DNA from: Octopus sinensis
Lineage: Eukaryota
Assembly: GCF_006345805.1 (NCBI RefSeq)
Contig: NC_043018.1
Coordinates: forward strand, 13,454,001-13,518,000
DNA: 64,000 bases
Reading direction: 5' to 3'
Numbering within the stretch: position 1 is the first letter of the stretch; every line of letters starts with the position of its first letter. Under the pieces are notes generated by a model. That model made no database searches. It saw nothing but the letters and a program-made list of their open reading frames with translations, and was not told where the DNA came from. A program made the translations under genes and the position numbers. Below are positions 2,701 to 59,854 of the stretch, in pieces.

Positions 2701-3170
2701 ATGGCAACCAAAAACTATTTAGAGTTACACGAACGAACTGAACACAATGGAAACAACAAGGAGAGTGTCTCATCGTACTATGATATCAATGCTCCACAGC
2801 ACAATGGATACAGCATGGGCAATTGGATACCACATGGCGAACTGGACATCACTCGGCAAACTGGTTATCGCTCATCGGATTCTGGTCGGCCATGTTCTTC
2901 GTGGACGGAGGAAGCTCAAGATATACCCATCGTCGTGGTAACGCCACAGGACCTTGAACGAAATAATCATAATAGTAGTAATGGTAACAGTATCCATGTG
3001 TTGGTTGGTGAAAAGGGAAGTCCTGATTTAAATGAGGATTCTAAAGATGGAAAAGTGCATCAGAATAATGGCAGCAGCGCAGACGAAACTCAAGACGAAG
3101 ACATGATGAAATATTTCAGCAACAAGCGACAATCACATAAAAAGAAAGGTCAGAGTTCCAAATCTGAAAG
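2701..3170 (+). CDS. TMC3: TMC coding exon 1 (disordered N-terminus MATKNYLEL...QSSKSE)
   Basis: Acceptor tctttccAG at 2688-2689, ATG at 2701, open hydrophilic frame, donor AG|GTCAGT at 3171. Phase 2 matches the next exon. Confidence 0.8.

Positions 3171-59854: not shown

What the first reader, a model, noticed from the sequence alone, without database searches (positions are those of the whole stretch)
2701..59854. Hidden 21-exon TMC1/2/3-type channel gene reconstructed across the window
Seen: small GT-AG exons chain without frameshift into a 10-TM protein with every TMC signature, although the ORF track captures few of them. Known: TMC1/2 are the pore-forming subunits of the vertebrate hair-cell mechanotransduction channel, and invertebrate TMCs act in mechanosensation. 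The N-terminal xQPW helices and the WDYxxGNP loop associated with CIB-family binding are retained. Inference: a candidate transducer for cephalopod statocyst or lateral-line-analogue hair cells, or sucker mechanoreceptors.
Basis: partly seen in the sequence, partly recalled or inferred. Interest (0 to 1): 0.72.

Follow-up and report, generated by a model that had tools for sequence, protein, structure and literature searches.

The report
Octopus TMC1/2/3-type channel gene, already annotated
The window really does hold 21 small exons of an octopus relative of the hearing-channel genes TMC1/2/3, but this exact gene is already in the public Octopus sinensis annotation, so it is a correct rediscovery, not something new.

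Summary
It has 21 + strand exons (2701-59854), all with GT-AG introns, in frame, giving 875 aa with no stop. The protein has a complete Pfam TMC domain (1.5e-32) and matches the solved C. elegans TMC-1 structure (7USW) at E = 6e-144. In a tree it sits inside the TMC1/2/3 clade (100% bootstrap against TMC4/6/7) but outside chordate TMC1+2+3, so it is a single "Tmc123" pro-orthologue. Five of six CIB-contact residues in both CIB-binding regions are identical.

The gene is not hidden from public annotation. The window is an exact piece of Octopus sinensis CM016880.1, and my 875 aa equal the first 875 aa of RefSeq XP_036368146.1 ("transmembrane channel-like protein 2-A", 1306 aa).

Position 59854 is a donor splice site in mid-codon, and two more coding exons (431 aa) lie 2-5 kb beyond the window.

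Exons are under purifying selection compared with O. vulgaris. A role in statocyst, epidermal-line or sucker mechanoreceptors is plausible but untested. The only octopus transcriptome survey I found recovered TMC5 and TMC7-like transcripts, not this gene.

The parts
2701..3170 (+). Coding exon 1 (aa 1-156): start ATG and a poorly conserved, low-complexity cytoplasmic N-terminus
   Evidence: Donor AAG|gtcagt. The annotated CDS of XP_036368146.1 starts at this ATG. An in-frame stop lies 17 codons upstream.
5854..5976 (+). Exon 2 (aa 157-197): '[25 protein letters not shown]', equivalent to the N-terminal CIB-binding domain CBD-1
   Evidence: HMM E = 6.5e-10. Aligns to human TMC1 residues 86-136, with K116 conserved and M113 replaced by I190. 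PDB 8z3f_B hit over aa 174-212.
7473..7548 (+). Exon 3 (aa 198-223): '[26 protein letters not shown]'
   Evidence: Acceptor ttttccccag|, donor GAT|gtgagt. Colinear at profile positions 97-123.
14428..14509 (+). Exon 4 (aa 224-250): '[11 protein letters not shown]' pre-TM1 helix
   Evidence: HMM E = 7e-08. Human K175 and E178 are conserved as K247 and E250.
18538..18644 (+). Exon 5 (aa 251-286): '[21 protein letters not shown]...', TM1
   Evidence: HMM E = 5.9e-17. Hydropathy peak at aa 256-284.
19760..19840 (+). Exon 6 (aa 287-313): extracellular loop 1
   Evidence: tblastn with mollusc homologues. Phase-0 acceptor and donor.
21525..21661 (+). Exon 7 (aa 314-358): 'YSVLFYGFY...' and TM2
   Evidence: HMM E = 1.8e-12. 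Hydropathy peak at aa 339-357.
28504..28651 (+). Exon 8 (aa 359-408): TM2-TM3 cytoplasmic loop '[25 protein letters not shown]', equivalent to CIB-binding domain CBD-2
   Evidence: HMM E = 3.6e-21. PDB 6wud_B (TMC1 loop peptide) E = 2.4e-12 over aa 373-415. Human F318 and W321 are conserved as F383 and W386.
29832..29875 (+). Exon 9 (aa 409-422): 44-nt micro-exon '[14 protein letters not shown]'
   Evidence: Weak HMM hit at the colinear profile positions 312-328. tttcag| acceptor and gtaagt donor. Present in the RefSeq protein.
31973..32114 (+). Exon 10 (aa 423-470): TM3
   Evidence: HMM E = 0.014 at colinear positions. Hydropathy peak at aa 425-452.
33152..33261 (+). Exon 11 (aa 471-506): TM4 and '[15 protein letters not shown]'
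   Evidence: HMM E = 1.1e-15. Hydropathy peak at aa 468-489.
36610..36667 (+). Exon 12 (aa 507-526): TM5 '[20 protein letters not shown]'
   Evidence: Hydropathy peak at aa 505-523. This exon is missing from the O. bimaculoides RefSeq model.
45335..45499 (+). Exon 13 (aa 527-581): variable extracellular loop ending in 'CWENYVGQ'
   Evidence: Matches Argonauta P0001. The Pfam TMC domain starts at aa 574.
45859..45987 (+). Exon 14 (aa 582-624): TM6, including the conserved Asp D590
   Evidence: HMM E = 5.2e-20. D590 and T594 align with a TM6 Asp and Thr that are invariant in all six aligned sequences.
46993..47060 (+). Exon 15 (aa 625-646): '[22 protein letters not shown]', start of TM7
   Evidence: 100% identical to Argonauta P0001. 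HMM E = 2.4e-14.
47823..48059 (+). Exon 16 (aa 647-725): TM7-TM9 and the end of the TMC domain
   Evidence: HMM E = 2.4e-36. Pfam TMC E = 6e-11 on this exon alone.
52787..52897 (+). Exon 17 (aa 726-762): loop and first half of TM10
   Evidence: Mapped with O. vulgaris P0105. Phases fit.
53405..53483 (+). Exon 18 (aa 763-789): second half of TM10 and '[15 protein letters not shown]'
   Evidence: HMM E = 9.1e-09. Hydropathy peak at aa 754-772.
56547..56589 (+). Exon 19 (aa 790-803): 43-nt micro-exon '[14 protein letters not shown]'
57536..57661 (+). Exon 20 (aa 804-845): start of the C-terminal cytoplasmic tail
   Evidence: 100% match to P0105.
59765..59854 (+). Exon 21 (aa 846-875): the last coding exon inside the window. 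It ends at donor CAG|gtgaga with one dangling base, so the CDS continues beyond the window.
   Evidence: The remaining 431 aa of XP_036368146.1 map to window-equivalent 66099-66389 and 68211-69224 in L002.

Best explanation
The window holds coding exons 1-21 of 23 of the single Octopus sinensis Tmc123 gene, the protostome pro-orthologue of vertebrate TMC1, TMC2 and TMC3 (RefSeq XP_036368146.1, auto-named 'transmembrane channel-like protein 2-A'). Shown here: the exon structure, the intact reading frame, purifying selection, the complete TMC domain, colinearity with the solved TMC-1 and TMC-2 structures, clade membership, and conservation of the residues that contact CIB proteins. Inferred from what is established for C. 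elegans TMC-1/2 and vertebrate TMC1/2: the product is a ten-pass membrane protein that dimerises. Each subunit probably carries its own ion-conduction groove lined by TM4-TM7. A CIB2/3-type EF-hand subunit (CALM-1/'CIB23') probably clamps onto the N-terminal helices (aa ~165-215) and the TM2-TM3 loop (aa ~365-420). The complex most likely conducts cations in response to membrane or tether force in a restricted set of sensory cells. Which cells these are (statocyst or epidermal-line hair cells, sucker receptors, proprioceptors) is not known.
For: 21 canonical GT-AG exons, 875 codons, no stop. Identical to XP_036368146.1 residues 1-875. The window is an exact substring of the O. sinensis locus that encodes that protein. 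Pfam TMC 1.5e-32 over positions 1-111 of 111. PDB 7USW 6e-144, 8TKP 6e-134, and the TMC1 peptides 6WUD 2.4e-12 and 8Z3F 0.005. The 6WUD peptide was crystallised with CIB3 according to PMC11861898; that 8Z3F is the CIB2 complex of the same paper is my inference. NJ tree: TMC1/2/3 clade 100% bootstrap, chordate TMC1+2+3 excluding octopus 88%, in line with PMC7003098. CIB-contact residues (PMC11861898): K116, K175, E178, F318 and W321 identical, M113 replaced by Ile. TM6 Asp and Thr conserved. Exons 12-21 are 98.8% identical to O. vulgaris against 94.5% for flanking non-coding DNA, with 10 synonymous and 3 non-synonymous codon differences. Orthologues exist in O. bimaculoides, O. vulgaris and Argonauta.
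Against: There is no expression, splicing or functional data for this gene in any cephalopod. An O. vulgaris transcriptome of arm tip and brain recovered only TMC5 and TMC7-like transcripts. Human TMC1 D572, just before TM7, is Lys in octopus, as in the TMC3 and Haliotis sequences of my alignment, and in C. elegans TMC-1, whose printed alignment reads EFKVAEN; from memory, this Asp affects permeation in TMC1. The TM4 residues Gly-Met (human 417/418) are Phe-Leu in octopus. Conduction properties therefore cannot simply be copied from TMC1/2. Vertebrate TMC3 has no demonstrated channel role. Invertebrate Tmc123 proteins have also been tied to salt and alkali sensing and to a background leak current.
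Confidence: 0.9

Rival explanations
1. It is the Tmc123 gene, but its main job in octopus is not sensory mechanotransduction. It might act as a chemosensory channel for salt or alkali, as a background leak conductance that sets excitability in neurons or muscle, or as a lipid scramblase-like protein.
For: C. elegans tmc-1 is reported to be needed for salt and alkaline avoidance (as cited in PMC12919962). Ecdysozoan Tmc123 genes act in proprioception, the control of locomotion and egg-laying via membrane depolarisation, and nociception (PMC7003098). Octopus has Lys where TMC1/2 have Asp (human 572), as TMC3 does. Octopus sucker mechanoreceptors are already attributed to a NompC/TRPN channel (PMC12919962 introduction).
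Against: Both CIB-binding regions and the TM6 Asp are conserved, which fits the architecture of the mechanotransduction complex. The gene's absence from an arm-tip and brain transcriptome argues against broad neuronal or muscle expression.
Confidence: 0.3
2. It is a decaying or non-functional gene copy whose exons only look intact.
For: No transcript evidence was available here. Exon 14 carries two W-to-C changes specific to O. sinensis and diverges at about the neutral rate, 6 differences in 129 nt.
Against: All 875 codons in the window plus the 431 beyond it are open. All splice sites are canonical. Exons are much more conserved than introns, with a 10:3 ratio of synonymous to non-synonymous differences. 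The protein is conserved as far as Argonauta (83-100% per exon). Both W/C positions vary naturally across the family.
Confidence: 0.02
3. It belongs to the TMC4-8 group (Tmc487 or Tmc56), not to TMC1/2/3.
For: None found.
Against: 100% bootstrap support for grouping with TMC1/2/3 against the TMC4, TMC6 and TMC7 representatives. It is 35-40% identical to TMC1/2/3 but 24-29% identical to TMC4/6/7. The octopus TMC5 and TMC7-like genes are separate transcripts.
Confidence: 0.01

Closest known systems
RefSeq XP_036368146.1, 'transmembrane channel-like protein 2-A' [Octopus sinensis], 1306 aa
   Same: It is the same gene at the same locus. My model is identical to its residues 1-875, and the window is an exact substring of the encoding contig.
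   Different: Nothing differs within the window. The RefSeq model adds two 3' exons (431 aa) that lie outside the window. Its automatic name '2-A' implies orthology to fish Tmc2a, which the tree does not support.
[quoted passage not shown]
   Same: Colinear over the TM core (E = 6e-144 and 6e-134). Both are invertebrate Tmc123-type proteins. The helices that bind CALM-1 (the CIB orthologue) are alignable.
   Different: The worm proteins have much longer loops between TM5 and TM6. The two worm genes come from a nematode-specific duplication, whereas only one Tmc123-type gene surfaced for octopus in my searches. Sequence identity is only moderate.
Vertebrate TMC1/TMC2 (hair-cell transduction channel) and TMC3
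   Same: The same clade. CIB contact residues and the TM6 Asp are conserved. The 6WUD loop peptide is recognisably homologous.
   Different: The octopus gene is a pro-orthologue of all three, because the Tmc12/TMC3 split is vertebrate-specific. It has Lys where TMC1/2 have Asp (human 572), as TMC3 does, and Phe-Leu at human Gly417-Met418. It also has a long, repeat-rich C-terminal tail.
Octopus bimaculoides XP_014768214.2 'TMC3' and O. vulgaris CAI9738747.1 'channel 3'
   Same: Both are orthologues, with 85% and about 99% amino-acid identity over shared exons.
   Different: Both models look flawed. The O. bimaculoides model lacks the TM5 exon and part of exon 4, and reads intron sequence ahead of exon 8. 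The O. vulgaris annotation cuts the gene into a 405-aa upstream call and a 673-aa C-terminal call with an artificial first exon.

Membership tests
TMC family (Pfam PF07810) | TMC domain scoring above Pfam's gathering threshold | tested here: met
   112.8 bits against a cut-off of 25, E = 1.5e-32, aa 574-689 covering profile positions 1-111 of 111.
TMC family | Ten-TM architecture colinear with solved TMC structures | tested here: met
   phmmer against 7USW: E = 6e-144 in two stretches, the best covering aa 137-534; the draft's printed alignment to 7USW covers TM6-TM10 as well. Against 8TKP: E = 6e-134, best stretch aa 561-811. Hydropathy alone gives 9 clear segments and a weak TM8. No 3D model was made.
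Tmc123 subfamily (TMC1/2/3 clade) | Groups with TMC1/2/3 to the exclusion of TMC4-8 | tested here: met
   NJ tree on 710 alignment columns, 100 of 100 bootstraps. Identity is 35-40% to TMC1/2/3 and 24-29% to TMC4/6/7.
Vertebrate TMC2 (as named in RefSeq) or TMC3 (as named for O. bimaculoides) | Nested inside that specific vertebrate orthogroup | tested here: not met
   It falls with molluscs (65%) and outside a chordate TMC1+2+3 clade (88%). The literature places the Tmc12/TMC3 split in stem vertebrates.
TMC-CIB transduction complex | Conserved CIB-binding domains CBD-1 and CBD-2, with their key residues | tested here: met
   The residues are defined in PMC11861898. M113 is Ile; K116, K175, E178, F318 and W321 are identical. 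PDB peptides 6WUD (2.4e-12) and 8Z3F (0.005) both hit. Overall identity is 14/49 in CBD-1 and 26/62 in CBD-2.
TMC-CIB transduction complex | Physical binding of a CIB2/3-type subunit, and presence of TMIE and CIB23 genes in octopus | not tested
   The partner genes are not in this window. Binding requires biochemistry.
TMC1/2-type pore | Acidic and polar pore-lining residues known from TMC1 (recalled from the literature): TM6 Asp and Thr, the Asp before TM7 (human D572), and TM4 Gly-Met | tested here: inconclusive
   The TM6 Asp and Thr are conserved (D590, T594) and the TM5 Asn is conserved (N515). However, human D572 is K631 and G417/M418 are F479/L480. The same is seen in TMC3 and other invertebrate sequences.
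Hair-cell mechanotransduction channel | Expression in mechanosensory cells and a mechanically gated current that depends on the gene | not testable with these tools
   No expression data were available. The one octopus transcriptome survey found did not recover this gene.

The most novel reading that the evidence does not exclude
This Tmc123 gene, together with a CIB23 partner, is the pore-forming subunit of the transduction channel in cephalopod statocyst and epidermal-line hair cells. That would mean a TMC-CIB machine underlies balance and hearing-like senses in both vertebrates and cephalopods, even though their hair cells have differently built bundles.
Probability: 0.3. Interest if true: 0.65.

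Novelty: already known. Interest (0 to 1): 0.2.

Why it matters
As a sequence finding it adds little, because the gene model already exists in RefSeq. Three points have modest value. First, the automatic names ('TMC2-A', 'TMC3', 'channel 3') are misleading: this is a Tmc123 pro-orthologue, and the only Tmc123-type gene that surfaced for octopus in my searches (I did not survey the whole genome). Second, the O. bimaculoides and O. vulgaris models of it are defective, so the O. sinensis structure confirmed here is the one to use as a reference. Third, a published list of octopus sensory-channel candidates missed this gene and labelled a TMC7-like transcript 'tmc-1 like'. The transduction channel of cephalopod hair cells has not been identified in the literature I could search. 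This gene is an obvious candidate and can be tested directly.

Tried and rejected
The first protein search used a concatenation of four exon peptides and returned only two hits, which briefly suggested the gene was unannotated. Searching with the full model found the RefSeq orthologues.

I used human TMC1 recalled from memory only as a probe for exons and for residue numbering. Its numbering matched six residues quoted in PMC11861898 and two further residues I recalled (G417, M418).

My first assumption, that human D572 sits in 'GDFLR', was wrong. It sits in 'TEFDISG', and octopus has Lys there.

I looked for the missing C-terminal 431 aa inside 59855-64000 and found nothing beyond low-complexity noise.

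Rfam found nothing at gathering thresholds in the window.

Pfam scans of ten intronic ORFs gave only one solid hit, a mariner Transposase_1 domain, and one weak zf-RVT hit.

No structure prediction was attempted.

The 'tmc-1 like' O. vulgaris transcript in PMC12919962 turned out to be TMC7-like, not this gene.

Full report
**What the window is.** The 64-kb window is AT-rich (about 40% G+C), full of microsatellites, and has no long ORFs. That is the look of an animal genome. It is an exact substring of Octopus sinensis assembly GCA_006345805.1, record CM016880.1. It occupies L002 positions 7301-71300, most likely record positions 13,454,001-13,518,000. It is about 95% identical to the orthologous region of O. 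vulgaris OX597835.1.

**Checking the observation.** Short + strand ORFs at about 18.4, 28.4, 45.8 and 47.8 kb looked TMC-like, and one of them hit Pfam TMC on its own (6e-11). I collected further exon leads in four ways:
- tblastn with an Argonauta hians fragment (P0001);
- tblastn with human TMC1 recalled from memory, used only as a probe;
- tblastn with 152 homologues from an exhaustive phmmer search;
- a profile-HMM scan of all 1850 + strand open segments.

Together these gave one colinear series covering profile positions 60-750. Enumerating the AG/GT boundaries around each core left a single chain with consistent phases. It has 21 exons from 2701 to 59854, every intron GT-AG, most donors gtaagt and most acceptors a pyrimidine tract followed by cag. 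The CDS is 2626 nt, 4.6% of the 57,154-bp span, and gives 875 codons with no stop. Two of the exons are micro-exons of 43 and 44 nt. Only 8 exons lie in ORFs of 70 aa or more, which is why an ORF list hides the gene.

**Identity.** The assembled protein carries a complete Pfam TMC domain (E = 1.5e-32, positions 1-111 of 111). It matches C. elegans TMC-1 (7USW) at 6e-144 and TMC-2 (8TKP) at 6e-134. Searching the large protein collection with the model returned XP_014768214.2, 'TMC3' of O. bimaculoides, at 85% identity. The cluster of the O. vulgaris fragment P0105 also contains XP_036368146.1, 'transmembrane channel-like protein 2-A' of O. sinensis, 1306 aa. My 875 residues are identical to its first 875, and its annotated CDS begins at window position 2701. 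The finding is therefore a correct, independent rediscovery of an existing RefSeq model.

**The 3' end.** Position 59854 is a donor site (CAG|gtgaga) with one dangling base. Reading through it would add only 'GEINK' before a stop. The remaining 431 aa of the RefSeq protein map to two further exons at window-equivalent 66,099-66,389 and 68,211-69,224 (the same two exons appear in O. vulgaris). Nothing in 59,855-64,000 matches them. The window therefore holds coding exons 1-21 of 23. The next gene downstream is an AP-5 sigma-1 subunit in both species.

**Is the gene alive?** Across exons 12-21, O. sinensis and O. vulgaris differ at 13 of 1106 nt (98.8% identity). The surrounding non-coding DNA is 94.5% identical. 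Codon differences are 10 synonymous and 3 non-synonymous. Exon peptides are 83-100% identical to Argonauta. This is purifying selection and not the pattern of a pseudogene.

**Which TMC?** I built a neighbour-joining tree (710 columns, 100 bootstraps) with named TMC1, TMC2, TMC3, TMC4, TMC6 and TMC7 sequences, amphioxus, an insect and five other molluscs.
- The octopus protein falls inside the TMC1/2/3 clade in 100% of replicates.
- It groups with the other molluscs (65%).
- It lies outside a chordate TMC1+2+3 clade (88%).

This agrees with Erives & Fritzsch (PMC7003098). They describe a Tmc123 clade distinct from Tmc48756 and place the Tmc12/TMC3 split in stem vertebrates. A 2026 preprint that lists three eumetazoan TMC genes (Tmc123, Tmc487, Tmc56), each paired with its own CIB paralogue, says the same. 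The RefSeq names '2-A' and '3' are best-hit artefacts.

**CIB-binding claims.** PMC11861898 maps two CIB-binding domains on human TMC1. CBD-1 covers residues 86-136, with M113 and K116 critical. CBD-2 is the TM2-TM3 loop, residues 298-359, with F318 and W321 critical. K175 and E178 form a further contact. In my alignment the octopus residues are I190, K193, K247, E250, F383 and W386, so five of six are identical and one is a conservative change. The crystallised TMC1 loop peptide (6WUD, in complex with CIB3) hits aa 373-415 at 2.4e-12. A second TMC1 peptide entry (8Z3F) hits aa 174-212 at 0.005. The sequence basis for a CIB partner is retained. Actual binding was not tested.

**Pore residues.** The roles of these residues are recalled from the TMC1 literature and were not tested here.
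- The TM6 Asp and Thr, and the TM5 Asn, are conserved (D590, T594, N515).
- Human D572, just before TM7, is Lys (K631), as in TMC3, Haliotis and C. elegans.
- Human G417/M418 in TM4 are Phe-Leu.

Channel properties should therefore not be assumed to be the same as those of TMC1/2.

**Function.** The best-supported mechanism, inferred by homology, is a dimeric TMC subunit with a CIB23-type auxiliary subunit that forms a force-sensitive cation pathway. The tissue is unknown. I found no paper linking a TMC to cephalopod statocysts, epidermal lines or suckers. An O. vulgaris survey based on an arm-tip and brain transcriptome found only TMC5 and a TMC7-like transcript, and labelled the latter 'tmc-1 like'. 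Absence from those tissues fits restricted expression but proves nothing. Invertebrate Tmc123 proteins also have roles in proprioception, nociception, and salt and alkali sensing. Octopus sucker mechanoreceptors have already been linked to NompC. The non-mechanosensory rival therefore stays open.

**Verdict.** The gene is already known, so novelty is nil. Interest is low and lies mainly in the untested hypothesis about its sensory role.

Noticed in passing
window 53539-56190 (intron 18): There is a 2.65-kb degenerate (GGT)n array of about 886 copies (60% G, 37% T) on the coding strand. It explains the GC skew of 0.71 in this region. The orthologous O. vulgaris intron has only about 50 bp of GGT repeats, so this is either a roughly 50-fold expansion in O. 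sinensis or a collapse in the other assembly. The pre-mRNA would carry a long G-rich tract.
   Followed up: partly
window 45859-45987 (exon 14), codons for C608 and C616: Two Trp-to-Cys differences (TGG to TGC) are specific to O. sinensis, in 'RGLCVRF' and 'KCCCWNLE'. O. vulgaris, O. bimaculoides and Argonauta all have Trp. Exon 14 also diverges at about the neutral rate (6 of 129 nt), unlike the other exons. Both positions vary across the TMC family.
   Followed up: partly
window 37246-37701 (+), intron 12; also 20153-20570 (-) and 26320-26775 (-): These are remnants of mariner/Tc1-type transposases. The ORF at 37474-37698 hits Pfam Transposase_1 (1.4e-13). The other two carry 'QDNARPH'- or 'DETWV'-type motifs but had no Pfam hit at E <= 0.01.
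   Followed up: partly
window 14183-14455 (+), 21698-22021 (-), 33270-33488 (-): A dispersed repeat family lies in the introns in both orientations. It is recognisable because its copies share an ORF fragment '[23 protein letters not shown]'. It is probably an octopus SINE or other interspersed element.
   Followed up: no
window 19139-19489 (-), 57912-58256 (+), 60251-60508 (-): These are intronic ORFs that look like retrotransposon tails. The first gives a weak zf-RVT hit (E = 0.0047, below the Pfam cut-off). The others have no hit.
   Followed up: partly
L001 (O. vulgaris OX597835.1:2285406-2326745) and P0153 (O. bimaculoides): The orthologous gene models in sister species look wrong. The O. 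vulgaris annotation splits the gene into a 405-aa upstream call and a 673-aa call with an invented first exon 'MPKLLYSDCIRSCK'; that first exon (L001 10001-10042) and the exon-16 match (from 11463) leave exons 14 and 15 (L001 ~9526-9654 and ~10630-10697) out of the 673-aa call. The O. bimaculoides XP_014768214.2 model lacks the TM5 exon and '[13 protein letters not shown]', and reads intron sequence ('[17 protein letters not shown]') ahead of exon 8.
   Followed up: partly
L002 73399-76521 (beyond the window's 3' end): The C-terminal tail encoded by the two exons outside the window contains many degenerate copies of a motif of the form 'S-Y-(I/F/V)-(D/G)-Q-x-(G/R)-S', for example SYIDQPGS and SYFDQPRS. 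No counterpart was seen in the other TMC sequences I read.
   Followed up: no
window 59855-59871: If the exon 21 donor is not used, the frame reads 'GEINK' and then stops. That would give a short-tailed isoform of about 880 aa. There is no evidence either way.
   Followed up: no
literature (PMC12919962, supplementary files 2-4): The O. vulgaris transcript c31137_g8_i2, listed as 'Transmembrane channel (tmc-1 like)' and paired with C. elegans tmc-1, is annotated in the paper's own supplement as TMC7. The true Tmc123 gene is absent from that candidate list.
   Followed up: yes
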